Below are positions 1 to 64,000 of a DNA stretch of 64,000 nt, piece after piece. The notes beneath the pieces are model-generated. The model ran no database searches and was not told the origin of the DNA. It saw only the letters and a program-made list of their open reading frames with translations. Every line of letters starts with the position of its first letter. The stretch's first letter is position 1. This DNA is from Octopus sinensis (lineage: Eukaryota): the NCBI RefSeq assembly GCF_006345805.1, contig NC_042997.1, forward strand, positions 199,206,001-199,270,000, read 5' to 3'. The position numbers and the translations under genes were made by a program.

Positions 1-718
1 CCTTTCGGGGGTCGATAAATTAAGTACCAGTTAAGCACTGGGATTGATCTAATTGACTAACCCCCTCCGCCCACCCCAAAATTTCAAGCCTTGTACCTAG
101 AGTAGAAAAGAATATTATTATGAAAGTAGTGATATGCCAGGCGAAATGCTTAGCAGTATTTTGTCTGATTAACATTCTGAGTTTAAATTCTGCCGAGGTT
201 GACATTGCTTTTTAAATTAAGTACCAGCTGTGTACTGAGGTCAATCTAAAAATTTCAGGTCTTGTACTTAGAGAAGAAAAAATATCATTATGGAAGTGGC
301 AAGCTGGCAGAATTGTTAGCATGCCAAGTGAAATGCTTAGTGGTGTTTCATCTGATTTACTTTCTGAGTTCAAATTCTACTGAGGGCGACTTTGCTTTTT
401 ATCCTTTCAGGGTCAATAAATTAAGTACCAGCTGTGTACTGAGATCGATCTAATTGACTGACCCCCTCCCACCAAATTTCAGGCCTTGTGCCTAGAGTAA
501 AAAAGAATATCATTATGAAAGTGGTGAGATGCCAGATGAAATGCTTTGCAGTATTTTGTCTGATTTACATTCTAAGTTCAAATTCTGCCGAGGTCAACTT
601 TGCTTTTTATCTTTTCAGGGCCGATAAATTAAGTACCAATAGCCTACCGAGGTTGATCAAATTGACTGACACCCTCCCTCAAAATTTCAGGCCTTGTGCC
701 TAGAGTAGAAAGGATTAT
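1..718 (+). mobile_element. Tandem cluster (~3 units) of tRNA-like SINE family A
   Basis: Repeated B-box-like GAGTTCAAATTC, central GCTTTTATCCTTTCAGGGTCGATAAATTAAGTACCAG (resembles the Nin/Deu SINE domain) and 3' AATTTCAGGCCTTGTGCCTAGAGTAGAAAAG. Confidence 0.8.
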
Positions 719-6886: not shown

Positions 6887-7395
6887 TTTATATATCTGTA
6901 TATATACTGCTATTAACGTTTAGCATATGTACATGTGTTTGTTTATAAATATCTTTTGTATGTATGTATGTATGTTTGTGCATGAGTATACAGATATCAT
7001 AAATAATTTAGTCAGGGCCCATGCCAGTGTCACATACCTGGCATCTGTACTGGTGGTACATAAAAAAGCACTCTTTGAACTTTGGGCCTCATGGAGGCAG
7101 TGACAAGTGACCGAGACCTTTGGTAATATGCTGTGCTTGAGAAGACCGGTCAAGTGAGATCATAGTCATGGCTGAATCTGGTGTTTTGTAATTGGTACTC
7201 ATGCCAGTGACACATAAAAAGCATCCACTACACTTTTGAAGTGGTTGGCATTAGGAATGGCATCCAGCTGTAGAAACTATGCCAAATCAGACTGGAACCT
7301 GGTGCAACTCTCTAGCTTTCAGTCAGTCCATCCAACCCATGCCAGCATGGAACACAGGCATTAAATGATGATGATAATTATCATAATGATATATA

Positions 7396-7683: not shown

Positions 7684-7711
7684 CACACACACACATATAT
7701 ATATATATATA

Positions 7712-8071
7712 TCATCATCATCATCGTTTAACGTCCGCTTTCCATGCTAGCATGGGTTGGACTGTTCAACTGGGGTCTGGGAAGCCCGAAGGCTGCACCA
7801 GGCCAGTCAGATCTGGCAGTGATTCTACATCTGGATGCCCTTCCTAACGCCAACCACTCCGTGAGTGTAGTGGGTGCTTTTTATGTGCCACCGACACAGG
7901 TGCCAGACGAGGCTGGCGAACGGCCACGCCCGGATGGTGTTTGTTACGTGCCCCCAGCACGGAGGCCAGTCAATGTGGTACTGGCTACGGCCACGTTCGG
8001 ATGGTTTTCTTATGTGCCACCGGCACTGGTACCACAAAAATACAAATTCCATTGATGTTCATCGATTTTGA
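7712..8071 (-). mobile_element. 5'-truncated RTE LINE 3' UTR (same subfamily as 28849-33451)
   Basis: Reverse complement matches ~32895-33450 with one copy of each module and a (GAT)n tail. Confidence 0.9.
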
Positions 8072-8158
8072 TATATATATATATATATATATACATATAC
8101 ACATATATATATACACACACACACATATATATATATATACATATACACATATATATAT

Positions 8159-8229: not shown

Positions 8230-8580
8230 CATAAACACACACACACATATATATATAAGTATCATACCAGCGTGTATTCAAGCAATTCAAAAATAAGGAT
8301 TCCTAGTTTAGCAATAAGATACCTACTGACAATCAGAAATCAAACTGATTAAAATGCAGGTGTTGTAAGGTAAATCATTCTCAAAGAGAGTAATTTAGAT
8401 ATAGCAAGAGAGAGTTCAAGAAGGAACATTTATCATTATAAGAGGTAACCATACATTAATGACACTTCGATAAAGTATATCTCAAAATAGTTGTCTAAGT
8501 ATATTCTGACTCATCAAAATCTTAGTTTGCTTGTTTTCAAGTCTATCAGCTGTCAACGTTGGCATATTTGGTAGCATTAA

Positions 8581-8982
8581 CCCTTTCGATACCAACCCGG
8601 CTGAAACTGCCTCTGACTCTGTAGTACAAATGTCTTGTTTTCATAAGTTTTGAATTAAAATCTTCCACCAAACCTTAGTCATAATTAATGCTCCTAACAC
8701 TAGCTTAATGATAACTAAGTTATTTTACTAAATTCTTTGTTATATTTAAAATTAATTGAAAGAAACACAGAGTATCCCAACAGAAATATACTAACAAAAG
8801 GGTTGACAAATTATTAATTTAACCCTTTTCATACTGACCTGGCTGAAACCAGCTTGGGCTCTGGGTACAAATATTTTGTTTTCATAAGTTTTGAATTAAA
8901 ATCTTCCACCAAACCTTATTCATAATTTATGTTCCTAACACTAGCTGAATGATAACTAAGTTATTTTACTAAATTCTTTGTT
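8581..8982. mobile_element. Head-to-tail pair of piggyBac-type MITEs (8581-8802 complete; 8823-8982 truncated)
   Basis: TTAA|CCCTTTCGATAC...CTAACAAAAGGG|TTGA; the second copy starts TTAA|CCCTTTTCATAC and is cut off by an RTE fragment. Confidence 0.85.
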
Positions 8983-10195
8983 GGACGATTTGACTGATGA
9001 CTGGCAAACCAGATGACTGCACCAGGCTCTAATCTTGATCCGGCAGAGTTTCTACAGCTGGATACCCTTCCTAATGCCAACCACTCCAAGAGTGTAGTGG
9101 GTGCTTTTACGTGCCACCGGCACAGGAACCAGTCAGGCAGTACTGGCAATGGTCACACTCAAATGGTGTTTTTATGCGCCACCTGCACAAGAGCCAGTCC
9201 AGGAGCACTGGCAATGATCTCGCTCAAATAATATATACACACACACACGACGGGCTTCTTTCAGTTTCCATCTACCAAATCCACTTACAAGGTTTTGGTT
9301 GGCCCGAGGCTATAGTAGAAGATACTTACTTGCCCAAGGTGCCATGCAGTGGGACTGGACTTGGAACCATGTGGTTGGGAAGCAAGCTTCTTACCACACA
9401 GCTACTCCTGTTTCTATATGTGTGTGTGCTTATAAATATTTATATATGTGTGTATGTTAATAAATATTTATGTGTGTGTATGTATGGAATGAAATAAACA
9501 AAGAAATCTTCTATAAACAAAACATAAAGATTCAACAGCAATAATGATGATAACCCTGCAGAAATTATTCAATAAATTAATATTAAATAATTCTGTGTCT
9601 CTGTGTACATGTATTCTTATGAACATGTGTTTTCATCTCTTAATATCGTGGAATCCCTATATTTATATTTTTATTAATATGGAGATAAGTGTTGTGTGAT
9701 CAAATAACCCAGTAACTACAATTCAGTTGTATACTGTTAAATGAAAATAATGGCCATTGTGAGAGAAGGTATTTCATATATTAATGTAGATTATGAAAGT
9801 CTTTTGGGTTGGTTTTATTTGAGAATATTAAACAGTGAAATGAGATCTGAATCATTATTGGATGTAGTGATTGCAAGGAGATTTTTAGAAAGTAGTCTGA
9901 GCAAAGAAAAGCCATATATCAATAATTTCTGAGGAAAGAAATAGATAAATGTATTGATAGAGAGTGAAAAAAAAAAAAAAAAAATTTGGTCAATATGCTC
10001 TTTGTTACAGCAGGATTTTAATTGGCATTGTGTATAATTCTTGGAGCAATCTATCACTGAGAAATTTGGAAAGAAATAAAATCGTTAAGTTGTTATTCTG
10101 TGCAGAAATGAGAGGCAATGCTTCATTTCGAGTCTTTTTTTCTTCTTATATTAAATGCGAATGACAGCGTCATATCTGTGTTGTGTCTTTCAAAC

Positions 10196-13501: not shown

Positions 13502-14116
13502 GAGGTTTGTAGTGCTGAAATGATTGTGTGGGATATGACCTGTACTTATAAAGCTAAGAGGTTTGTAGCGCTGAAATGATTGTGTGGGATATGACCTGTA
13601 CTTATAAAGCTAAGAGGTTTGTAGCGCTGAAATGATTGTGTGGGATATGACCTGTACTTATAAAGCTAAGAGGTTTGTAGCGCTGAAATGATTGTGTGGG
13701 ATATGACCTGTACTTATAAAGCTAAGAGGTTTGTAGTGCTGAAATGATTGTGTGGGATATGACCTGTACTTATAAGCTAAGAGGTTTGTAGTGCTGAAAT
13801 GATTGTGTGGGATATGACCTGTACTTATAAAGCTAAGAGGTTTGTAGTGCTGAAATGATTGTGTGGGATATGACCTGTACTTATAAAGCTAAGAGGTTTG
13901 TAGTGCTGAAATGATTGTGTGGGATATGACCTGTACTTATAAAGCTAAGAGGTTTGTAGTGCTGAAATGATTGTGTGGGATATGACCTGTACTTATAAAG
14001 CTAAGAGGTTTGTAGCGCTGAAATGATTGTGTGGGATATGACCTGTACTTATAAAGCTAAGAGGTTTGTAGCGCTGAAATGATTGTGTGGGATATGACCT
14101 GTACTTATAAAGCTAA
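13502..14116. repeat. 56-bp minisatellite, 11 copies
   Basis: Unit GAGGTTTGTAG(T/C)GCTGAAATGATTGTGTGGGATATGACCTGTACTTATAAAGCTAA; unit 5 has a 1-nt deletion. Confidence 0.97.
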
Positions 14117-20460: not shown

Positions 20461-21345
20461 AAGGCAGCAAACTGGCAGAAACGTTAGCATGCCAGGCAAA
20501 ATGCTTAGCAGTATTTTACTTGTGTTTATATTCTGAGTTCAAATTCTGCCGAAGTAGACTTTACCTTTCATCCTTTCAGGGTCGATAAATTAAGTACCAG
20601 TTATGCACTGTGGTTGATATAATCGACTTAATCCCTTAGTCTGTCCTAGTTTATCTCCTCTATGTTTAGCCCCTTGTGGGCAATAAAGAAATAAGAAACG
20701 TTAGCATGCGACGAGCTGACAGACACGTTAGCACGCCAGGCGAAATGCTTAGCGGTATTTCGTCTGCCGTTACGTTCTGAGTTCAAATTCCGTCGAGGTC
20801 GACTTTGCCTTTCATCCTTTCGGGGTCGATAAATTAAGCACCAGTTACGCACTGGGATGGATGAAATCGACTTAATCCATTTGTCCGTCCTTGTTTGTCC
20901 CCTCTATGTTTGTCCCCCTCTATGTGGGTAGTAAAGAAATAGGTATTTCGTCTGTCTTTATGTTCTGAGTTCAAATTCCACCAAGGTCGACTTATCTTTT
21001 CATCCTTTCAGGGTTGATAAATTAAGTAGCAGTTGTCTATTGAGGTCAATCTAATCGACTGGTCCCTTCCTCAAAAATTTTGGGCCTTGTGCCTAGAGTA
21101 GAAAAGAATATTTTTATGTATTTGAATGCAGCAAGCTAGCAGAAATGTTAGCATGCTGAGTGAAATACTTAGCGGTACTTCATCTGTCATTACGTTCTGA
21201 GTTCAAATTCCGCTAAGGTCATATTAGCTTTTCATCCTTTCAGGGTCAGTAAATTAAGTACCAGTTGCATACTGGGGTTGATCTGATCGATTGGAACCCT
21301 GCCCCCAAATTCCGGGCCTTGTGGCTAGAATAGAAAAGAATATGT
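20461..21345 (+). mobile_element. Tandem cluster of ~4 SINE family A units
   Basis: Repeated GAGTTCAAATTC and TTTCATCCTTTC(A/G)GGGT(C/T)GATAAATTAAG blocks. Confidence 0.85.
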
Positions 21346-25488: not shown

Positions 25489-25924
25489 CCCTTTCGTTAC
25501 TGTATTTATTTTGAGATGTTCTGTGTTTCTTTCAATTATTCTAAATATAACAAAGAATTTAGTAGAATAACTTAGCTATCATTAAACTATTGTTGGGAAC
25601 GCAAATTGTGATTAAGGTTTGGTGGAAGATTTTAATTCAAAATTTATGAAAACAAGACATTTGTACTACAGAGCCAGAGGTGGTTTCAGCCGGGTTGGTA
25701 TCAAAAGGGCTAAATTAATCATTTGTTAATCCCTTTGTTACCATATTTCTGTTGAGATGTTCTTTGTTTCTTTCAATTAATTTTAAATGTAACAAAGAAT
25801 AAACTATTGTTAGGAACATAAATTGTGATTAAGGTTTGGTGGAAGACTTTAATTCAAAACATAAAAACAAGACGTTCGTACTACAGAGCCAGAGGTGGAT
25901 TCAGCTGGGTAGGTATCGAAAGGG
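25489..25924. mobile_element. Head-to-tail pair of piggyBac-type MITEs (25489-25709; 25731-25924), opposite orientation to the 8581 pair
   Basis: TTAA|CCCTTTCGTTAC...GGTATCAAAAGGG|CTAA, then TTAAT|CCCTTTGTTACC...GGTATCGAAAGGG|TCAA. Confidence 0.85.
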
Positions 25925-26705
25925 TCAAGTCTACAAGACATTCCTGCCTTGCACTTTTGGATGGTAAAATACAGAGTTTCAAACAACTCTAAAATTAACC
26001 TCTAGATTAATTAGTATGGTGGGTGGTGGGGAGGGATAATTAACAAGGTTTACTCTTTTAAAATTTTATCAATTTTAAAATCAATATTTTATTATTTTAG
26101 ATTTTGTCTTGAACTCACACACAATTGTATATGTACTGTTAAAATATGTGTTAATGTAAATAATACTTTTATTTGAGTTAGTATTTATTTTTTTTTTCCT
26201 GCGATGACAAAGGAACACCTGAGATAAACAATAACGTGTTAAAAAGTATTTCCAGTTGAAAATCTCTCCATTGTTTCACCTAATTACTACATAACGATAT
26301 AACACTGACTGCAATGTAGAACAAATGCGACCATTCACATAGAATATTCTGGTACAAATATCAATGCATCCAACAAATGGAAATTGTAAAAATAAAAAAA
26401 GTAGCAAACAAAAAATACCTAGGCCTTCTGAAGAATTAGCAAAAAAAAAAAAAAAAAAAAAAAACACTGGCTTTGTTTGATATAAGGTAAAGCTACCATT
26501 TCAGTAGCATAAACAAATTTTTTGCTTGCAAACTTGCAACTTCCGAGTCTTTTGTTCAGGTTCACCTTCTTGTTGATTAAACATACGATATACTCTCCAA
26601 GCATTATGCTTCTGTTGTCTGTTCCTACATTAGTATTTATTTAATGCTGCGTAATAACCAGCAACAGACCGAGTTTACGTTTCGTTTCATTTAAAGAATT
26701 ATTTT

Positions 26706-27907: not shown

Positions 27908-28848
27908 TATACTGTGAAGGATTGTGGTCAAGTGGTTTGAGTATTTGGCTCAAGATTGAAAGGTCATTTTTAACTGCATTAAAAGTAGTACTCCAGTATG
28001 GCCACACACCAATGACAGAAATCAAAGATAAAAACAACATTAGTTTATATGTAAATATTAACCAAGAGACAATCTGCTTTGCTTCAACAGAAATTTTATA
28101 ATTACCAGCAATGTTAACAGAAATGTGAAATATTCTTATATTCTTCATAATCAGATCAAAGAAATCTAATTTAATTACATGATTGTAAGTTTAATTAAAA
28201 ATGTTTTGAAAGTTAAATGCTAAAATAAAGGTAGAGAAAATTATACACTGTGTTAGAAACATTGACAACATCCCATTCTCAAGCACCAAATTCACTAAAT
28301 TCTTCAAATGTTTTCTGAAGATTAATTTAATTTGACCCATGATAGATATTCTAAATTACAAACTTGAAGACCATTTGAGAAGGCTCCGCCTACTGGAGTC
28401 AACTTCAAATATTAATATAACAAGAAGGATGTAAAGATTAAATATTTTATATCTCTTCTAACTAGTTTTAATTATAAATTCTTTTTAACTACTCAATGTT
28501 TAAGAGACAGCTAAGATAATTGTTAGATTCCTTGTGTCACTAAAAGAGTAATCAATCTGTTTACTTTGGTGAGATTCAGTTTTTATTTCAATATAATTTT
28601 TATTGCTTATATTAAATTTGCTATTTAACCCTTTCGTTACCAACCTGGCTAAAACTGGCTCTGGCTCTGCAGTATAAATGTCTTCTTTCATAAGTTTTGA
28701 ATTAAAATCTTCCACCAAATCTTAGTTACAATTTATGTTCTTAACACTAGCTTAATGATAACTAAGTTATTTTACTAAATTCTTTGTTATATTTAAAATT
28801 AATTGAAAGAAACACAGAGCATCTCAACAGAAATATGGAAATGAAAGG

Positions 28849-30940
28849 CTGGTGCAAAGTCCCCTTAAGACCCAAAATAACATGGTGGTGGAACAATATT
28901 GTTGATAGGGCTATTAGACAAAAGAAACAGGCTTGGAAGGCCTGGAAGAACGGTGGTAGCAGGAAGTGTATCAGACTGCCAGAAGGGAAGCTAGGAGACA
29001 GGTCTATCTAGCCAGAGGGGAAGCAGATAAAAGAAAATTTGCCAATGTCCTGCGCCGTGAGGATGAAAGACTTGAGGTATTTCGTGTTGCAAGACAGTGT
29101 GTGAGAGAGAATCGAGATGTGGTAGGAGAGAAATGTGTTCGCATGGAGGATGGTTCACTTGCGCTAAATGAGGATGCAAAGAGAGAAGCTTAGAGACGCC
29201 ACTATGAAAGGTTGCTGAATGAGGAAAATGAATGGGATAAAGAGAGTCTGCCGAATGTTGACCCAACAGAGGGACCAGCTATCCGAGTTGATAGTTCCGT
29301 GGTAGCTAAGGCAATTAGAAGCATGAAGACAGGGAAAGCCCCAGGCCCATCAGGAATTACTGCAGAGATGCTCAAAATATCTGGTAGTGTCGGCTATAGC
29401 ATAGTCACCCGTATAGTTAACCAGGTGATACACGAATGAGTCATACCCAATGACTGGTGTAGCAGCATAATAGTCAACTGCTACAAAGGTAAAAGCGATG
29501 CCCTAGATACAAATAACTACAGGGGCATCAAGCTGTTGGATCAGGTAATGAAGGTTACGGAGAGGGTTATAGCCCAGTTAATTAGAGAGAGAGTTAGCTT
29601 AGATGATATGCAGTTTGGGTTCGTGCCAGGGAAAAGTACTACTGATGCTATATTCCTGGTAAGACAGCTGCAGGAGAAATACCTAGCCAAAGGTAAGCCC
29701 TTGTACCTGGCTTTTGTTGACTTAGAGAAAGCCTTTGACAGGGTCCCCCGATCCCTTATCTGGTGGTCAATGAGGAAACTAGGGATAGATGAATGGTTAG
29801 TGAGAGCTGTGCGAGCCATGTACAGAGACGCAGCTAGTAAGGTGAGGGTTGGCAACGAGTATAGTGAAGAATTCCGGGTAGAGGTTGAGGTCCACCAAGG
29901 TTCAGTCCTCAGCCCCCTCCTATTTATCATAGTCCTCCAGGCAATAACGGAAGAATTTAAGACAGGATGCCCCTGGGAGCTCCTATATGCTGATGACCTT
30001 GCTCTAATTGCTGAGTCACTATCAGAACTGGAGGAGAAGTTTCAGGTGTGGAAACAAGGATTAGAATCGAAGGGCCTTAGAATCAACCTAGCCAAAACCA
30101 AAGTCCTAATAAGTAGGAAGGTGGACCAACCACAAACGACTTCAGGTAGATGGCCCTGCTCGATCTGTAAAAAGGTGTAGGTAGAGAAACTCTATAAGGT
30201 GCACCAAGTGTAAGCTATGGACACATAAGAGGTGCAGCAATGTCAAAGGAAGGCTAACTAAGAAAATAGTTTTTGTCTGTGGCAGATGCTCAGGAGAAAT
30301 AAACACTGGAAATGTGCAGAGACCAACTTCTACCACGTTCCAGGGAGACAAACTAGAAGTAGTTGATAGCTTCCGCTACCTAGGAGACCAAGTCAGTAGC
30401 GGGGGTGGGTGTGCTGAAAGTGTAACTGCTAGAGTAAGAATAGCCTGGGCAAAGTTTAGAGAGCTCTTACCCCTGCTGGTGACAAAAGGCCTCTCGCTAA
30501 GAGTAAAAGGCAGACTATATGATGCGTGTGTACGTACAGCCATGCTACATGGTAGTGAAACATGGGCCGTGACAGCTGAGGATATGCGTAAGCTTGCAAG
30601 AAATGAAGCCAGTATGCTCCGATGGATGTGTAATGTCAGTGTTCATAATCGTCAGAGTGTAAGTACTTTGAGAGAAAAGTTGAACCTAAGAAGTGTCAGT
30701 TGTGGTGTGCAAGAGAGACGGCTGCGCTGGTATGGTCATGTGACGAGAATGGCTGAAGATAGTTGTGTGCAAAAGTGCTACACCCTAGCAGTTGAGGGAA
30801 CCTGTGGAAGAGGTAGACCCAGGAAAACCTGGGATGAGGTGGTGAAGCACGACCTTCGAACTTTAGGTCTCACCAAGGAAATGACTGAAGACCGAGTCCT
30901 ATGGAAGTGTGCTGTGCATGAGAGGACCCGGCAGGACTAG
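28849..30940 (+). pseudogene. RTE-type reverse transcriptase with embedded PHD finger, disabled
   Basis: Motifs GKAPGPSGI, NYRGIKLL, FVDLEKAFDRVP, HQGSVLSPLLF, YADD (29986-29997), FRYLG, RRLRWYGHV, GRGRPRKTW. In-frame stops at 29191-29193 and 29437-29439; frameshifts near 28965 and 30170-30188. No endonuclease domain in the part present. Confidence 0.93.
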
Positions 30941-33283
30941 TCAGGCCATATCCCGTGCCCCTACTTGGGACGTAGTCGATCCACCTGTGCATACCTTCTT
31001 CCTTTGTGATACTTGTGAAGACCTGCTGAGGCAAGTGAAAATCAATCAAAATAGATGAACATCAATGGAATTTGTATCTTTGTGGTACCAGTGCCTGTGG
31101 CACACCAAGAAAACCATCCGAATGTGGCCGTAGCCAGTACCGCATCGACTGGCCTCCGTGCTGTGGGAACATGGTGGCACATAAAAACACCATCCGAAGA
31201 CCCGCAAGACTAGTCAGGTCATAACCCGTGGGCCTACCTGGGACGTAGTCAGTCCACCTACATACCTTCCTTCTTGTGACACTTGTGAAGACCTGCTGAG
31301 GCAAGTGAAAATCAAAATCAAATCAAAACAAATCAAAATAGATGAACATCAATGGAATTTGTATCCTTGTGGTACCAGTGCCGGTGGCACACAAGAATCC
31401 ATCCGAACGTGGCCGTAGTCAGTACCGCTTGTGGTACCAGTGCTGGTGGCACAAGAATCCATCCGAACGTGGCCGTAGTCAGTACCGCATCACTCGCCAT
31501 TGTGCTGTGGGCACATAACAAACACCATCCGGTCGTGGCCGTTCGCCAGCCTCATCTAGCACCTGTGTCGGTGGCACATAAAAAGTAGTCAGTACCGCTT
31601 GTGGTACCAGTGCGGTGGCACACAAGAATCCATCCGAACATGGCCGTAGTCAGTACCGCATCACTGGCCATCGTGCTGTGGGCACATAACAAACACCATC
31701 CGGTCGTGGCCGTTCGACAGCCTCATCTAGCACCTGTGTCGGTGGCACATAAAAACACCTTCCGAAGACCCGGCAAGACTAGTCAGGCCATAAACCATGG
31801 CCCCTACCTGGGACGTAGTCAGTCCACCTGTGCATACCTTCCTCCTTGTGATACTTGTGAAGGCCTGTTGAGGCAAGTGAAAATCAAATCAAAATCAAAA
31901 TCAAAATCAAAACAAATCAAAATAGATGAACATCAATGGAATTTGTATCTTTGTGGTACCAGTGCCGGTGGCACACAAGAGAAAACCATCCGAAAGTGGC
32001 CGTAGCCAGTACCGCATCGACTGGCCTCCGTGCTGTGGGCACATGACAAACACCATCCGATTGTGGCCGTTCGCCAGCCTCATCTAGCACCTGTGTCGGT
32101 GGCACATAAAAACACCATCCGAAGACCCGGCAAGACTAGTCAGGCCATAACCCATGGCCCCTACCTGGGACGTAGTCAGTCCACCTGTGCATACCTTCCT
32201 TCTTGTGACACTTGTGAAGACCTGTTGAGGCAAGTGAAAATCAAATCAAAACAAATCAAAATAGATGAACATCAATGGAATCTGTATCTTTGTGGTACCA
32301 GTGCAGGTGGCACACACTTTGTGGTACCAGTGCCGGTGGCACACAAGAGAACCATCCGAACGTGGCCGTAGCCAGTTCCGCATCGACCGGCCTCCGTGCT
32401 GTGGCACGTAACAAACACCATCCGATCATGGCCGTTCGCCAGCCTCATCTGGCACCTGTGTCGGTGGCACATAAAAACACCTTCCTTCCGAAGACCCGGC
32501 AAGACTAGTCAGTCCACCTGTGCATACCTTCCTTCTTGTGACACTTGTGAAGACCGGTTGAGGCAAGTGAAAATCAAAATCAAAATCAAAATAGACAAAA
32601 TAGATGAACATCAATGGAATTTGTATCTTGTGGTACCAGTGCCTGTGGCACACAAGAAATCCATCAGTGCCGTAGTCAGTGCGGTGGGCACATGACAAAC
32701 ACCATCCGATCGTGCCGTTCGCCAGCCTCATCTAGCACCTGTGTCGGTGGCACATAAAAACACCATCCGAAGACCCGGCAAGACTAGTCAGCCATAACCC
32801 ATGGCCCCTACCTGGGACGTAGTCAGTCCACCTGTGCATACCTTCCTTCTTGTGACACTTGTGAAGACCTGTTGAGACAAGTGAAAATCAAAACAAATCA
32901 AAATAGATGAACATCAATGGAATTTGTATCTTTGTGGTACCAGTTCCGGTGGCACGTGCCACATAAGAAAACCATCCGAACGTGGCCGTAGCCAGTACCG
33001 CATCGACTGGCCTCCGTGCTGTGGCACGTAACAAGCACCATCCGATCGTGGCCGTTTGCCAGCCTCATCTGGCACCTGTGTCGGTGGCACATAAAAACAC
33101 CATCCGAGCGTGGCCGTCTGCCAGCCTCGTCTGGCACCTGTGTCGGTGGCACATAAAACACACCATCCGAGCGTGGCCGTCTGCCAGCCTCGTCTGGCAC
33201 CTGTGTCGGTGGCACATAAAAAACACCATCCAAGTGTGGCCGTTTGCCAGCCTCGTCTGGCACCTGTGTCGGTGGCACATAAA
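30922..33283 (+). repeat. Two-level tandem array in the RTE 3' UTR (6 higher-order units built from ~60-nt hairpin modules)
   Basis: Units begin at ~30922, 31196, 31764, 32121, 32490 and 32769 with GAAGACCCGGCAAGACTAGTC; about 22 CCATCCGA-type module starts counted by eye. Confidence 0.92.
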
Positions 33284-34429
33284 TCACCCACTACACTCTC
33301 GAAGTGGTTGGCGTTAGGAAGGGCATCCAGCTGTAGAAACACTGCCAGATCTGACTGGACTGGTGCAGCTTTCGGGCTCCCCAGACCCCAGTTGAACCGT
33401 CCAACCCATGCTAGCATGGAAAGCGGACGTTAAATGATGATGATGATGATGATGAAAGGGTTAAGTAAACCCTTTCGTTATCAACATGGCTAAAACCTAG
33501 GAAATACAATCTTAATTCAGCTGAGATACATAATCACTGAATGCACACAATGAGAAAAGGTAGCTGGTGCTATGTCTATATCATCATCCATCATCATCAT
33601 TTAACATCCATTGTCCATGCTGGATTGAGTTGGATGGTTTGACCAGGGCTGGCATGCTGGAAGGCTGCGCCAGACTCCAGTATGATTTTAAATGGTTTTC
33701 TATGGCTGGATGCCCTTCCTAATGCCAACCACTCTGAGAGTGTAATGGGTGTTTTTATGTGCCGCTGACATCAGTGCCATTTGCGTGACACAGGGTACAT
33801 CATCATCGTTTAACATCTGCTTTCCATGCTAACATGGATTGGATGATTGACTGAGGGCTGGCGAACCGGATGGCTGCACGAGGCTCCAAACTTGATCTGG
33901 CAAAGTTTCTACAGCTGGTTGTCCTTCCAAACACCAACCAATCCGAGAGTGTAGTGGGTGCTTTTACGTGCTACCAACACAGGAGCTAGTCGGGCGATAC
34001 TGGCAACGAATTGCCTATACCCCCATAAACAAAACTTACTGTGTGATGAGTGGAAGTCGAGGAAAAACAAGGCTGATCTCAGCAGGAATGTCTGGTAGCA
34101 GGATACCATCTCAAGAACTCTTTCCTAATCCATAACAGCGTGGACAAAAAAAGGACATAAAAATAATGTTGATTATAATGTGTGTGTGTTGTGTGTAAAC
34201 GCGCACACATTATCATCGACACGTATATAGTGAGATGCTAGGGACAATCAGAGATAGAAGGATCACGCCAATATGACAAACTGATAAATAAAAGATGAGA
34301 CTAATAGACTGGAAAATTTAAAGTTGTCACAGCAATAACTCATATATCAGAAAAATAGATAATTACATCAACTCATGAGCTTTATCAGAAGAGCTGTGTG
34401 GTTTTCTTTTAGATAGATATATAATAACA

Positions 34430-35912: not shown

Positions 35913-36619
35913 TAAATAAATAAAAGAATACAAAAAGTGGGACAAGCTTAGATTTTCCTTGGGGCTGGCCAGATTCGAGCAGTCGAAACTGCAAATCTAA
36001 TCTGGAACTCGCCTGACGAAATAAAACTCTGAATGACCTGCCCTTGCTTTTTCTTGTCTCGTTTTTGTATCATCACTCTGGATGTTTTGCGTTCTTCTCC
36101 TATTATTTGTATTCTTTTTTATATACATATAGTGGTGCACGTACACTTTGGTCTCTTACATGTGAGTATATATATATATATATATATATCATCATCATCA
36201 TCGTTTAACGTCCGTTTTCCGTGCTAGCACAAGTTGGACGGTTCAAGTGGGGTCTGGGAAGCCAGGGGGTGCACCAGGTTCCAGTCTGATCTGGTAGTGT
36301 TTTCCTAATATCTGTGGTGCTTATGGCCCTTGTGCATCTGCCGCTTTGATTTTTCAGCAAAGTTTTTTTCTCTGATGGAATTACTTATAAGAAAATGTCA
36401 TTGTTGTTTAGACTGCTCAAACAGGTCAATCCTAGTTGAGCATGTAGGTTTATAACCAAAGACTTTCTAGTCATCCTGATTCCAGCTTATTATTTATCCT
36501 ATATTCCATTACCCAAGATGGTCATTTCTTAAAAAAACGTGGTAGGGAAAAGATTTGAGGGTAATTTGGCTGCTATTTCTAACAGGTGAGCAAGAAAAAA
36601 AAATTAAAATTGCACTCCA

Positions 36620-38035: not shown

Positions 38036-38790
38036 ATCATTATCATCGTTTAACATCCACTTTCCATGCTGGCATGGGTTGGATAGTTTGACTGAGGACT
38101 GGCAAGCCAGGAGGCTGCACCAGGCTCTGATCTGATCTGGCAAGGTTTCTACAGCTGGATGCACTTCCTAATGCCAACCACTTCAAGAGTGCAGTGGGTG
38201 CCTTTCACTTGCCACCAGCATAGGAGCTAGACAGGCGGTACTGACATTAGCCATGCTCAAATAGTGCATTTTATGTGTTACCAGTGTTGGTGCCATTCAA
38301 GTGGCAATGGCATCAGCCATGACTATGATTTCATGTGACTCAACAGGTCTTCTCAAGCACAGCATACTGCCTGATGGTTGAAGAGTACTTTTAAATGGGC
38401 CAGTTATGTGACACTGGCATTGGCCATGGCGGTGATCTCACTTGGCTTGCTGAGTCTTCTCAGTCACAGCATATTTCCAAAGGTCTCAGTCTCTTGTCAT
38501 TGCCTCTGTGAGGCTCAACGTTCAATGGTCGTGCTTCACCACCTCATCCCATGTCTTCCTGGATCCACCTCTTCCACAGGTTCCCTCCACTGTTAGGGAG
38601 TGACACTTCTTCACACAGCTCTTCACATCCATACACAACACATTACGATGCCAGCACTGTCGTCTCTCTTGCACACCACATCTGATGCTTCTTATGTAGA
38701 ACTTTTCTCTCAGGGCACTTACACTCTGTCATATACGCACACTGACATTACACATCCAGCAGAGCATACTAGCTTCATATCTTTCTTTCT
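38036..38790 (-). mobile_element. 5'-truncated RTE LINE (RT C-terminus plus unexpanded 3' UTR)
   Basis: Reverse complement of 38500-38790 aligns by eye with ~30600-30890; CATCGTTTAAC tail. Confidence 0.85.
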
Positions 38791-42294: not shown

Positions 42295-42852
42295 ATGTTA
42301 GCACACCGGGCAAAATGCATAGCAGTATTTCGCCTGCAGCTACGTTCTGAGTTCAAATTCCACCGAGGTCAACTTTGCCTTTCATCCTTTCGGGGTCGAT
42401 TAAATAAGTACCAGTTACGCACTGGGATCGATATAATCGACTTAATCCATTTGTCTGTCCTTGTTTGTCCCCTCTGTGTTTAGCCCCTTGTGTGTAGTAC
42501 AGAAATAGGTATTTTGTCTGCCGCTACGTTCTGAGTTCAAATTCCGTCGAGGTCAACTTTACCTTTCATCCTTTCGGGGTCGATTAAATAAGTATCAGTT
42601 ACGCACTGGGGTCGATATAATCGAATTAATCCATTTGTCTGTCCTCTCTGTATTTAGCCCCTTGTGGGTAGTAAAGAAATAGGCATTTCGTCTGCTGTTA
42701 CGTTCTGAGTTCAAATTCCGCTGATGTCGACTTTGCCTTCCATCCTTTTGGGGTCAATTAAATAAGTACCAGTTACGCACTGGGGTCGATATAATCGACT
42801 AAATCCGTTTGTCCTCTCTGTGTTTAGCCCCTTGTGGCAAGTAAAGAAATAG
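42295..42852 (+). mobile_element. Triple tandem SINE family A
   Basis: Three consecutive B-box/central-domain/tail units. Confidence 0.9.
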
Positions 42853-43234
42853 GTTAAGACACAGAAGGGTTGACAAGAAAAGGAGTTTTAGGTGGTCTTA
42901 GTGCTTTGCTTGCTAAGTAATAGGAACAGAAACTGTTATAATAATGGTAGGAGTAACAAAGAGAAGAAGCAGCAACACTAAAGTGGATTAATGGTTATTT
43001 GTAAGAGAAGTTTTATTAATCAATTGGATGTCCTTTTAATTTTTGTTATCTCTGGAATATTTGTGTGTGTAGGTGCATCATCCTTAAAATGTGATCCACA
43101 CTTATACTTTGTAGAAGATCAGTAACCATTTAACATTGCAGTATTTCTTGGCTGTAAAGAAAAAGCCAGGCCAGTGAGGTATTGTTTTGTGATGTCAGAG
43201 ATGTGTTATCACCTTAAAGAATTATCAGAAATCT

Positions 43235-62037: not shown

Positions 62038-62455
62038 GGCGGCGAGCTGGCAGAAACGTTAGCACGCCGGGTGAAATGCCAAACGGTATTTCTTCTGCCG
62101 CTACGTTCTGAGTTCAAATCCTCCGAGGTCGACTTTGCCTTTCATCCTTTTGGGGTCGATTAAATAAGTACCACTTACGCACTGGGGTCGATATAATCGA
62201 CTTAATCCGCTTGTCTGTCCTTGTTCGTCTCCTCTGTGTTCAGCCCCTTGTGGGGAGTAAAGAAATAGGTATTTTGTCTGCTGTTATGTTCTGAGTTCAA
62301 ATTCCGCCACAGTCGACTTTGCCTTTCATCCTTTTGGTGGTCAATTAAATATGTACCAGTTACGCACTGGGGTCGATATAATCGACTTAATCCGTTTGTC
62401 TGTCCTTGTTTGTCCTCTCAGTGTTTAGCCCCTTGTGGGTAGTAAAGAAATGGGT
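62038..62455 (+). mobile_element. Double SINE family A with probable 16-bp TSD
   Basis: AAGGGAGTTTTAGAGG (62013-62028) / AAGGGAATTTTAGAGG (62456-62471). Confidence 0.85.
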
Positions 62456-64000
62456 AAGGGAATTTTAGAGGGTTGATATACTTAGGAGGAAGATTTGGGC
62501 ATAGAAGTTAGTGTGACGATTAGGGACCACTCTATATAGAGAAAAGTGGATAGGGGACGTCTAGATGAAGGTGCCAAGAGACAAACCGGCTTTGAAAAAC
62601 AGAAGACACTGTAGTATCAAAAGAAAAGGCAGAGAGAGGAGACATCTTATATATATATGTGTGTGTGTGTATCTAACATATACACACACACTAGATATTA
62701 GAGTGTAATTTTCATTATTTTACTATTTGTTCATTCTTTCGTTGGTGTTAAAAATAGAATCTGTTCATCAAAATCTTTTCTCTAATGACAAGAGCTTTCA
62801 TACAAATAATGCTAAAACATGTTTACAAACTTGAAAACATGACACATGTTGCTTTGGACATAAATCTTATCACATGAACGAATAGAAAACAATAACACAA
62901 AGGAAGGTGTGAGCACTCCAGCTGTGGCTGCACTTCTCTTCTGCTGCTTCCAATCATCAGCGTGTTTATGATATGTAATATATTTAATTGGCTATTTCGT
63001 TTCTGTATCAATAACTTACTAAAAATATTAAATATTTTGCAAAATAATTTTGTTATTAACATGTAAGACTTGGTGAAAGGATAATATTCTGTCTTTGAAT
63101 GTTGATATATTTTTCTCTCATAATTTTCTTTAGTTCCTTAATGTAAACCTTAGGAAAACATTTGCACTTACCATTGAATTAAATTTTCAATTCAGGAATT
63201 ATAATGAAGTTAGAGCAGTTCCAAATGCAAAGATTTGTACACCACCATCATCATCATTTTAATTTCAGGCTTTGTGCCTAGAATAGAAAAGAATATCTAT
63301 ACTTGCATAGGCTGGGCATAATTAATTTAAGTAGATTTTCTATAGCTGGATGCTCTACCTGTTACCGACCCTTATCTCTCTTCATGCAAAGTAATATTTT
63401 CCCATGGCCAGACATGTTTTTGCTGAATATTGGAAATGAATGACACAGCTTGTATGACTGACACTCATTTATAAATATCCTGCAATGCCAAGACAAAGGG
63501 ACCCAGACACACATCCATACAATAGGATTTTTCCAGTTTCTTACTTCTTTATTGCCACAAGGGGCTAAAGGAGTTTTCCAATTTCTGTCTATCAAATCCA
63601 CTCACGAGGCTTTGATAAGCCCTAAGGCTATACTCTAAGATACTCACCAAAGCTGTGCACTTAATGTGACTTACTGCAATCTTTCATACCTCTGTCTGTC
63701 TATCTTTTATACCTTTCACTCCGTAATGTGATTGATGTTGATAAGAGAATCTCGCCATAGAAACAGAGCTCAAAATAATAATGAAATTATTGTATACAGT
63801 GCTCAGGCGTAACACAACTTGTCAAAAATGCGTATAAAGTATATGCAGTAATGTACAAATGTCTGGAAATTATGCTTACTAGTGAGATGCTGTCTTTGTA
63901 GCACATCTAGGTGAGCAGCGCACCTGAATATGTGCTGAGTCAGGCCTTGGTGATCCACCCGACCCATGCTAGCATGGAAAGCAAACGTAAAACAGAGATG

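What the first reader, a model, noticed from the sequence alone, without database searches (positions are those of the whole stretch)
30922..33283. RT followed by a 2.4-kb hierarchical array of hairpin modules within the retroelement 3' UTR
Seen: six higher-order units (~274, 568, 357, 369, 279 and ~515 bp) each restart at a copy of the last RT codons and stop (GACCCGGCAAGACTAGTC). Each has a variable (ATCAAA)n tract, then shuffled ~60-nt modules built as CCATCCGA-N2-GTGGCCGT, hairpin 1 (GCCAGT/ACTGGC or TGCCAG/CTGGCA), hairpin 2 (GTGCC-N3-GGCAC) and an A-rich linker. The last unit has four tandem copies of one module. The sibling copy at 7712-8071 has one of each module and the copy at 38036 is unexpanded. 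So the expansion is specific to this copy or sublineage. Inference: repeated template jumping by the RT back to the ORF end during TPRT (CATCCGA/CATGAGA microhomology at the joints), or later unequal exchange. Either way it yields a multivalent structured RNA and a possible LINE-to-satellite birth. No unique spacers are present.
Basis: partly seen in the sequence, partly recalled or inferred. Interest (0 to 1): 0.82.

Follow-up and report, generated by a model that had tools for sequence, protein, structure and literature searches.

The report
Tandemly amplified 3' end of a dead octopus LINE
A broken, 5'-truncated RTE-like LINE copy in an octopus genome has had a ~350-bp piece of its 3' untranslated region (plus the last 13-15 bases of its reading frame) amplified into six diverged tandem copies, an ordinary minisatellite-type growth inside a transposon with no sign of a special structured RNA.

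Summary
Six higher-order units start at 30925, 31198, 31767, 32124, 32493 and 32772. Each restarts at the last RT codons plus the stop, and the array ends at 33283. It lies inside one LINE insertion (28849-33454) flanked by a candidate 8-bp target-site duplication. The LINE is dead: 5'-truncated, with at least two frameshifts and two premature stops.

The 63-67-nt modules are a family feature. About a dozen other copies carry one to four of them. The higher-order repeat was found only here.

All five unit junctions are the same sequence, CCATCCGA|AGACCC, with 2-3 nt of microhomology. No junction carries the 3' tail domain. The units differ by 4-13%, with transition-biased substitutions and mutually incompatible shared variants. 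The array also holds further duplications and deletions in other phases.

The best reading is one founding microhomology duplication followed by unequal exchange or slippage in DNA. End-to-end RT template jumping does not fit. The structured-RNA idea has no support: folding z-scores lie between -1.9 and +1.1, there are no Rfam hits, covariation is negligible, and the hairpins are decaying inside the array.

TE 3'-UTR-derived tandem repeats are a known kind, so interest is low. No octopus genome could be searched, so uniqueness and timing remain untested.

The parts
28841..28848 (+). 5' copy of the candidate target-site duplication ATGAAAGG, inside the 3' terminal inverted repeat of a MITE-like host repeat (28623-28848)
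   Evidence: Other copies of the host repeat end ...AACGAAAGGGTTAA. Here that end is split by the LINE.
28849..30940 (+). 5'-truncated, inactivated LINE reading frame (RT, a PHD-like zinc-finger region and an RTE-like C-terminus). The frame changes near 28990 and near 30180. Premature stops lie at 29191 and 29437. The true stop is TAG at 30938-30940.
   Evidence: ORF fragments. RVT_1 on 29536-30180, E = 1.6e-29. Frame and stop map. 85.6% DNA identity to an O. vulgaris paralogue that continues further 5'. Homologues carry a PHD finger.
30925..31197 (+). Unit 1 (273 bp). It holds the genuine ORF end and stop, the unique 3' UTR head, a short (AAATC)n tract, the lead hairpin, and a fused A/B module (a 63-nt deletion between modules).
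31198..31766 (+). Unit 2 (569 bp). The copied ORF end has a 1-nt deletion. It contains secondary duplications of 60 bp and 171 bp in a different phase.
   Evidence: (periods 60 and 171, 95% matches).
31767..32123 (+). Unit 3 (357 bp). This is the canonical unit: ORF end, head, the longest (AAAATC)n tract, lead, A, B1.
32124..32492 (+). Unit 4 (369 bp), with a 29-bp duplication of the lead hairpin and a TTCC duplication at its 3' junction.
   Evidence: (period 29).
32493..32771 (+). Unit 5 (279 bp), with a 36-bp deletion between two TAGTCAG direct repeats and a partial deletion of module A.
32772..33097 (+). Unit 6, duplicated part (head, lead, A, B1). It runs on into the unduplicated remainder of the original 3' UTR.
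33098..33283 (+). Modules B2-B4 (63 nt each). This is the original tandem module run of the 3' UTR, downstream of the founder breakpoint, which lies 10 nt into B2.
   Evidence: (period 63). L002 has the same A + 3B layout.
33284..33433 (+). Conserved 3' tail domain with a terminal palindromic hairpin, CCATGCTAGCATGG (33406-33419). It is shared by many 5'-truncated or tail-only copies in the window.
   Evidence: 20 aligned tails; consensus hairpin.
33434..33454 (+). (ATG)7 microsatellite tail of the LINE.
   Evidence: Tails of the same kind in L001 and L002.
33452..33459 (+). 3' copy of the candidate target-site duplication ATGAAAGG (overlaps the last ATG of the tail).

Best explanation
An RTE-like LINE of an Octopus genome inserted, 5'-truncated, into a MITE-like repeat.

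Its family's normal 3' UTR reads as follows: stop codon; a ~115-nt unique head; an (AAATC)n microsatellite; a lead hairpin; one A module; one to four 63-nt B modules; a ~150-nt conserved tail with a terminal hairpin; and (ATG)n.

In this copy, one DNA-level tandem duplication joined a point 10 nt into module B2 (...CACCATCCGA) to a point 13-15 nt upstream of the end of the reading frame (AGACCCGGCAAGACTAG...). The join used 2-3 nt of microhomology. This created a ~350-bp repeat unit.

Unequal sister-chromatid or homologue exchange and replication slippage between the now homologous units then raised the number to six. The same processes shuffled variants between units and produced further small duplications and deletions in other phases.

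The array has since decayed neutrally, like the dead reading frame next to it.

Shown: the anatomy, the single shared junction, the absence of tail sequence between units, the divergence pattern, and the lack of the array in the other copies sampled.

Inferred: that the founding event and the amplification happened in DNA after insertion, and not in the source element or during reverse transcription.
For: 1. One TSD-flanked insertion holds the ORF remnant, the array and the tail.

2. All five junctions are the same sequence, and that sequence occurs nowhere else in the window or in the four fetched animal loci L001, L002, L048 and L049.

3. The layout is exactly that of a simple internal tandem amplification, (X)n followed by the rest. 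Units 2-5 end after B1, and only unit 6 runs on into B2-B4 and the tail.

4. Paralogues have a single unit with 1-4 modules: L001 from O. vulgaris, L002, and window 7711-8072.

5. Pairwise unit identity is 87-96% and is not star-like. U3, U4 and U6 are 95-96% alike, while U1, U2 and U5 are 87-93% alike to the others.

6. The derived-site spectrum has 46 private sites, 11 partly shared sites with incompatible splits (U1U3, U2U5, U1U5, U3U4U6 and others), and about 8 sites shared by all units. That is the mosaic expected from exchange between units.

7. Substitutions run about 2:1 transitions to transversions, so they look like real mutations.

8. The same stretch shows at least six further slippage-type events in other phases: 171-, 60- and 29-bp duplications, a 63-nt module fusion, 36- and 21-nt deletions between short direct repeats, and variable microsatellite lengths. 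DNA-level instability is therefore demonstrably at work here.

9. The mean divergence of units from their consensus (about 4%) matches the window-lineage branch in the ORF (3.9%) and in the tail (3.7%), as expected if all of it decays together.
Against: The timing relative to insertion is not resolved. Private divergence of the oldest units (about 2.4-3.8%) comes close to the whole window-lineage branch (3.9%). The first duplications could therefore be as old as the insertion, or could already have been present in the source RNA.

A 2-3 nt microhomology is also what an internal RT template switch would leave.

No octopus genome, raw reads or orthologous locus could be searched, so 'only in this copy' rests on about a dozen sampled copies.

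The ratio of small indels to substitutions in the array (about 1:5) is several times that of the neighbouring ORF (about 1:30). Some unit differences may therefore be assembly or polishing error.
Confidence: 0.6

Rival explanations
1. The multi-unit 3' UTR arose at the RNA or cDNA level. Either the RT switched template internally during target-primed reverse transcription (from the ORF end back to module B2), or the source (master) element already carried two or more units and this is a copy of a sublineage, further modified afterwards.
For: 2-3 nt of microhomology at the junction. The duplication lies wholly downstream of the true stop, so it would not harm a master element. The deepest unit splits are nearly as old as the window lineage itself. 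RTs of non-LTR elements do make head-to-tail products by serial template copying (PMC11371274).
Against: Documented jumps run from the 5' end of a template to the 3' end of the next, which would leave the tail domain and (ATG)n between units. Neither is present at any junction. Five jumps at one identical pair of internal sites, followed by normal read-through into the ORF, is less parsimonious than one event copied onward. Unit divergences are heterogeneous and mosaic rather than star-like. No other sampled copy has the junction.
Confidence: 0.27
2. The array is selected as a multivalent structured RNA, for example RT-binding hairpin modules, a processed ~60- or ~350-nt RNA, or a ribozyme or rolling-circle template.
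For: The module's sequence blocks and both short inverted repeats recur in diverged subfamily copies: 94.8% of cells are paired (92.7% in hairpin 1, 97.0% in hairpin 2), and many of the one-sided changes in hairpin 2 are CG-to-UG changes that keep pairing. The lead hairpin and module B fold slightly better than shuffles (z = -1.85 and -1.47).
Against: - Whole-UTR folds are no better than shuffled sequence (z = +1.07 and +0.40). Module A, the head and the tail give z of about 0.
- Only 3 of 330 cells show a compensatory double change, and 22 of 500 shuffles reach the covariation score. The changes that keep pairing are C-to-T changes, partly at CpG.
- There is no Rfam match at E <= 1, ribozyme families included, and no tRNA-like structure.
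- Inside the array, hairpin 1 is broken in 6 of 15 modules, against 3 of 18 elsewhere.
- The host LINE copy is dead and promoter-less because of its 5' truncation.
Confidence: 0.05
3. Assembly artefact: a single unit, or fewer units, mis-expanded by the assembler.
For: The density of 1-2 nt indels in the array is several times that of the flanking ORF, as happens in poorly polished long-read repeats.
Against: Units differ by 4-13% in transition-biased substitutions and by large unit-specific rearrangements (171-, 36-, 29- and 21-bp events). An artefactual expansion of one unit would not create these.
Confidence: 0.04

Closest known systems
Satellite or tandem repeats derived from LINE 3' ends, for example the chicken HinfI (SCR1) repeat from the CR1 3' UTR plus part of ORF2, and the common cetacean satellite from the L1 3' end (review PMC9659126)
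   Same: The repeat unit consists of the end of the LINE reading frame plus 3' UTR sequence, arranged head to tail. A UTR that is already internally repetitive seeds the amplification.
   Different: Those are genome-wide satellites with many units and loci. Here there are six diverged units at one locus, inside an otherwise ordinary TSD-flanked insertion. No spread was seen.
Hypervariable tandem repeats in retrotransposon 3' UTRs, for example PisTR-A in the 3' UTR of Ogre elements and HeT-A 3' non-coding repeats (PMC9659126). The VNTR region of SVA is a similar case (my own knowledge).
   Same: Short modules (here 63-67 nt) sit in the UTR and vary in number between copies (1-4 in the copies sampled here). 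They can expand locally.
   Different: Here a second, higher-order level (~350 bp) that includes coding sequence and the stop codon lies on top of the module level.
RTE-clade LINEs of cephalopods (RTE-2_OV, PMC9115989; RTE-BovB expansion in cephalopods, PMC10294476; 13 recently active RTE families in O. vulgaris, PMC13282606)
   Same: A single ORF with an RT. The C-terminal GRGRPRKTW...DR..W motif resembles BovB (my recollection). It has a microsatellite 3' tail and is very abundant as 5'-truncated copies in Octopus.
   Different: The clade was not established by phylogeny here. This family has a PHD-like finger after the RT and a long (~0.5 kb) modular 3' UTR. RTE-2_OV is described instead as having a 3' UTR made mostly of a microsatellite that starts at the ORF end.
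Head-to-tail products of serial template jumping by non-LTR RTs (R2; PMC11371274), and retrozyme or rolling-circle tandem arrays (bioRxiv 10.64898/2026.07.22.740005, listed)
   Same: Tandem head-to-tail copies of retroelement sequence next to an RT gene.
   Different: End-to-end jumps give whole-template units that include the 3' end, whereas here the units lack the tail. No hammerhead, HDV-like or twister ribozyme was found by Rfam.

Membership tests
Non-LTR (LINE) retrotransposon, RTE-like | Reverse transcriptase domain of the non-LTR type | tested here: met
   RVT_1 E = 1.6e-29 on 29536-30180. Thousands of animal RT+PHD homologues.
Non-LTR (LINE) retrotransposon, RTE-like | N-terminal apurinic-type endonuclease | not testable with these tools
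   The copy is 5'-truncated at about 28849. The L001 paralogue is also truncated and decayed upstream.
Non-LTR (LINE) retrotransposon, RTE-like | Insertion signature: 5' truncation, target-site duplication, simple-repeat 3' tail | tested here: met
   ATGAAAGG lies at 28841-28848 and 33452-33459, splitting a MITE-like repeat end. The (ATG)7 tail follows.
Non-LTR (LINE) retrotransposon, RTE-like | Placement in the RTE clade by RT phylogeny | not tested
   Indirect evidence only: the C-terminal motif resembles BovB (my recollection), the 'endonuclease-reverse transcriptase' names of distant hits, and literature on RTE abundance in octopus.
Satellite DNA | Long homogeneous arrays, typically many units and/or many loci | tested here: not met
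   Six units of 87-96% identity at one locus. The junction is absent from the rest of the window and from L001, L002, L048 and L049. A genome-wide search was not possible.
Minisatellite-type local tandem amplification inside a TE | Head-to-tail units sharing one junction, variable internal repeat numbers, mosaic variants between units | tested here: met
Curated structured RNA family or self-cleaving ribozyme | Match to a covariance model, or covariation-supported structure | tested here: not met
   No Rfam match at E <= 1 in 28000-34000. Covariation is negligible. Folding z-scores run from -1.85 to +1.07.
End-to-end RT template-jump concatemer | Each unit carries the template's 3' end (the tail) at the junction | tested here: not met
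   The junctions read ...CACCATCCGA|AGACCC... with no tail domain or (ATG)n.

The most novel reading that the evidence does not exclude
The ~350-bp unit was multiplied at the RNA/cDNA level by internal template switching of the LINE's own RT, or is carried by a still-mobile sublineage. On that reading this locus would capture the step by which a LINE 3' UTR with built-in hairpin modules turns into a dispersed, self-propagating tandem-repeat family (an incipient satellite) in cephalopods.
Probability: 0.12. Interest if true: 0.5.

Novelty: new member of a known kind. Interest (0 to 1): 0.22.

Why it matters
This is a clean, well-delimited example of how tandem repeats grow in layers inside a transposon: a microsatellite, then 63-nt modules, then a 350-bp higher-order unit that swallows the stop codon. 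That is the proposed first step from transposon to satellite DNA.

It is useful in practice for repeat annotation of octopus genomes. Such arrays inflate LINE consensus sequences and mimic multiple insertions.

It does not by itself reveal a new mechanism, RNA or function.

Tried and rejected
1. Searching for other loci with the junction.
- The plus-strand junction ORF gave no hits against the 5.8-billion-protein index.
- The minus-strand junction ORF against 1.84 billion representatives gave only 5 weak hits to long proteins (up to 3015 aa) that I took for repeat matches without inspecting them; best E = 1.3e-10.
- An 18-mer junction scan of metagenome contigs gave 45 hits. All are chance bacterial matches with unrelated flanks.
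- None of these collections holds an octopus genome in searchable DNA form, so the negatives say little.

2. More paralogues through the look-up of encoding contigs. L048 and L049 turned out to be other LINE families or species with unrelated 3' UTRs.

3. The minimum-free-energy fold of module B, a long interrupted stem pairing CCA/CGAG/UGGC with GCCA/CUCG/UGG. It is rejected: 79.6% of cells are paired, and it scores worse than nearly all shuffles.

4. tRNA or SINE origin of the modules. ARAGORN finds nothing and Rfam finds nothing.

5. Tandem independent LINE insertions. Rejected because the units lack the tail and (ATG)n, and the whole block has one pair of TSDs.

6. Clade assignment from homologue names. 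These were uninformative: most hits are unnamed, and two are mislabelled as bacterial.

7. Dating the array relative to the insertion from branch lengths. This was inconclusive.
Full report
**What is there**

The window is cephalopod DNA. The RT C-terminus gives 70-91% protein identity to Octopus vulgaris and O. bimaculoides entries. An O. vulgaris chromosome locus (L001, OX597814.1) holds a paralogue that is 85.6% identical over 2.4 kb.

The element on the + strand is a non-LTR retrotransposon. It has RVT_1 at 29536-30180 (E = 1.6e-29). Its homologues carry a PHD finger after the RT. Its C-terminal GRGRPRKTW...DR..W motif reminds me of RTE/BovB, but that is my recollection and not a test.

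The literature reports RTE, Dong-R4, CR1 and L1-Tx1 LINEs as the abundant and active LINEs of Octopus, and RTE-BovB as expanded in cephalopods (PMC9115989, PMC13282606, PMC10294476). I did not place the element by phylogeny.

**The copy is dead and well delimited**

The reading frame shifts near 28990 and near 30180 and has premature stops at 29191 and 29437. The paralogue in L001 continues further 5', so this copy is 5'-truncated at about 28849.

It sits in the 3' terminal inverted repeat of a MITE-like repeat (28623-28848). Other copies of that repeat end ...AACGAAAGGGTTAA. Here ATGAAAGG lies at 28841-28848, and again at 33452-33459 directly after (ATG)7, followed by GTTAA.

The ORF remnant, the array and the tail therefore belong to one TSD-flanked insertion.

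Six units start at 30925, 31198, 31767, 32124, 32493 and 32772, and the array ends at 33283. Each unit begins with the last codons and the stop of the RT frame. It then has:
- a ~115-nt unique head;
- an (AAATC/AAAATC)n tract of variable length;
- a lead hairpin (GTGGTACCAGTGCCGGTGGCAC);
- module A (66-67 nt);
- module B1 (63 nt).

Only the last unit continues into B2-B4, the ~150-nt tail domain and (ATG)7. The motif counts are far above chance: 5 against 0.02 expected, and 20 against 0.05 expected. The module order is conserved, not shuffled.

The departures from the canonical unit are secondary events:
- an A/B module fusion in U1;
- 60- and 171-bp duplications in U2;
- a 29-bp duplication in U4;
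- 36- and 21-nt deletions between short direct repeats in U5.

**What is a family feature and what is copy-specific**

The modules are a family feature. L002 has A+B+B+B. The L001 paralogue has A+B'+B. Window 7711-8072 (-) has A+B. Further truncated copies in the window and in L001 carry one to three modules. The blocks CCATCCGA, GTGGCCGT, GCCAG...CTGGC and GTGCCGGTGGCAC recur in subfamilies only 70-80% alike.

The higher-order repeat is not a family feature. The junction CACCATCCGA|AGACCCGGCAAGAC occurs five times, all in this array. In the other copies that retain it, the ORF end is preceded by ORF sequence (...GAGAAGACCC).

**How it most likely arose**

The five junctions are one and the same sequence. 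The module reads CCATCCGA|(G/A/T)CG, and the ancestral ORF reads GAGA|AGACCC (L001, L002). The breakpoint therefore has 2-3 nt of microhomology.

The layout (X)n followed by the rest, with the 3' breakpoint 10 nt into B2, is what a single internal tandem duplication followed by amplification gives.

Pairwise unit identity runs from 87% to 96%. U3, U4 and U6 form a tight group (95-96%), while U1, U2 and U5 are more distant. Substitutions are about 2:1 transitions to transversions.

With three outgroup copies, the derived sites fall as follows:
- 46 are private to one unit (about 12 of these lie in misaligned microsatellite or indel positions);
- 11 are partly shared, with mutually incompatible groupings (U1U3, U2U5, U1U5, U3U4U6, U1U3U5, U2U3U5);
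- about 8 are shared by all units.

This mosaic, together with the many slippage-type events in other phases, is the signature of unequal exchange, conversion and slippage in DNA.

The mean divergence of units from their consensus (about 4%) equals the window-lineage branch in the ORF 3' end (3.9%) and in the tail (3.7%). The array therefore decays together with the rest of the dead copy.

Using the O. vulgaris calibration quoted in PMC13282606 (JC 0.065 for about 18 My), unit splits of 2-6% per lineage correspond to roughly 5-17 My. That is a rough inference.

**Why not RT template jumping**

Documented jumping by non-LTR RTs goes from the 5' end of a finished template to the 3' end of another, giving head-to-tail whole-template units (PMC11371274). 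Here no junction carries the tail domain or (ATG)n, and both breakpoints are internal. Five identical internal switches followed by normal read-through into the ORF are possible but less parsimonious than one event copied onward.

I cannot exclude that the first duplication occurred in the source element or during TPRT. The private divergence of the oldest units (2.4-3.8%) approaches the whole window-lineage branch. I give that rival about 0.27.

**Structured RNA**

The short inverted repeats exist. The supporting evidence is weak:
- only 3 double-change cells;
- 22 of 500 shuffles reach the covariation score;
- the changes that keep pairing are C-to-T changes, partly at CpG.

The minimum-free-energy alternative is rejected. 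Folding energies are not better than those of dinucleotide shuffles:
- the whole canonical UTR gives z = +1.07;
- U6 plus the tail gives +0.40;
- module A gives +0.18;
- the tail gives +0.02;
- the head gives +0.21;
- only module B (-1.47) and the lead hairpin (-1.85) lean negative.

Rfam gives nothing at E <= 1 and ARAGORN gives nothing. Within the array, hairpin 1 is broken in 6 of 15 modules. There is thus no sign of selection on the array.

The modules may matter to the active elements. The best-conserved structure is the terminal hairpin of the tail. By analogy with LINEs whose RT recognises a 3' stem-loop plus a microsatellite (my knowledge of UnaL2-type elements), that hairpin is the likelier RT recognition site.

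**Caveats**

Small (1-2 nt) indels are several times more frequent relative to substitutions in the array (about 1:5) than in the adjacent ORF (about 1:30). This may reflect slippage or imperfect polishing of a long-read assembly. It does not affect the existence of six structurally distinct units.

No octopus genome, reads or orthologous locus could be searched. My three attempts to find the junction elsewhere were made in collections that cannot answer the question.

**Comparison and verdict**

Tandem repeats born from retrotransposon 3' UTRs are well documented. Some include the end of the reading frame: the chicken CR1-derived HinfI repeat, the cetacean L1-derived satellite, Ogre PisTR-A and HeT-A (PMC9659126).

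This locus is a small, old, single-locus instance of that kind in an octopus RTE-like LINE. It is a new member of a known kind, of modest interest.

Noticed in passing
window 28623-28848; also 8577-8789, 8817-8982, 25490-25715 (-), 25738-25928 (-); a further copy starts at 33466: A ~230-bp MITE-like repeat with terminal inverted repeats (TT)AACCCTTTCGTTACC ... GTAACGAAAGGGTTAA. The ends suggest a TTAA target, which would be piggyBac-like (my guess). The LINE inserted into its 3' TIR, and another copy abuts it. This explains the 29-bp match between 28627-28655 and 33468-33496.
   Followed up: partly
window 13502-14116: A 56-bp unit repeated 11 times at 99% identity (TRF score 1188). This is a young, homogeneous minisatellite, unlike the diverged LINE array.
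   Followed up: no
window 321-718, 20472-20911, 42327-42853, 62085-62456: An abundant SINE-like repeat (core ...TTCTGAGTTCAAATTCCGCCGAGGTCGACTTTGCCTTTCATCC...) occurs as tandem dimers or trimers with periods of 174-244 bp at four places in the window.
   Followed up: no
window 33580-33779 (-) and 33798-33992 (-): Two tail-only copies of the same LINE family's 3' domain lie head to tail, in inverted orientation, just downstream of the LINE. Many more tail-only copies are scattered through the window (for example 7207-7384 and 36188-36302).
   Followed up: partly
window 33396-33429 and 19 other tail copies: The tail's terminal palindrome CCATGC(Y)AGCATGG is enclosed by a possible outer stem, CGTCC...GGACG. 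In three copies (window 38108, window 33639, L001 3207) both sides change together to ATCC...GGAT. Both changes are CpG decays, so this may be coincidence.
   Followed up: partly
proteins P0122 and P0209: Two close homologues of this octopus LINE RT (81-82% identity) are deposited under bacterial names (a Herbaspirillum MAG and Escherichia coli). This is most likely animal DNA contamination in those records.
   Followed up: no
L049 986-1269: A related LINE (69% protein identity, RT+PHD) from a metagenome contig has an unrelated ~250-nt 3' UTR ending in (ATC)n instead of the modules and (ATG)n. The modular UTR is therefore specific to the octopus family.
   Followed up: partly
window 9100-9229 (-): Another truncated copy of the LINE family has two tandem 65-nt modules (TRF period 65, 81% matches). 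This shows that module-number variation is general in the family.
   Followed up: partly
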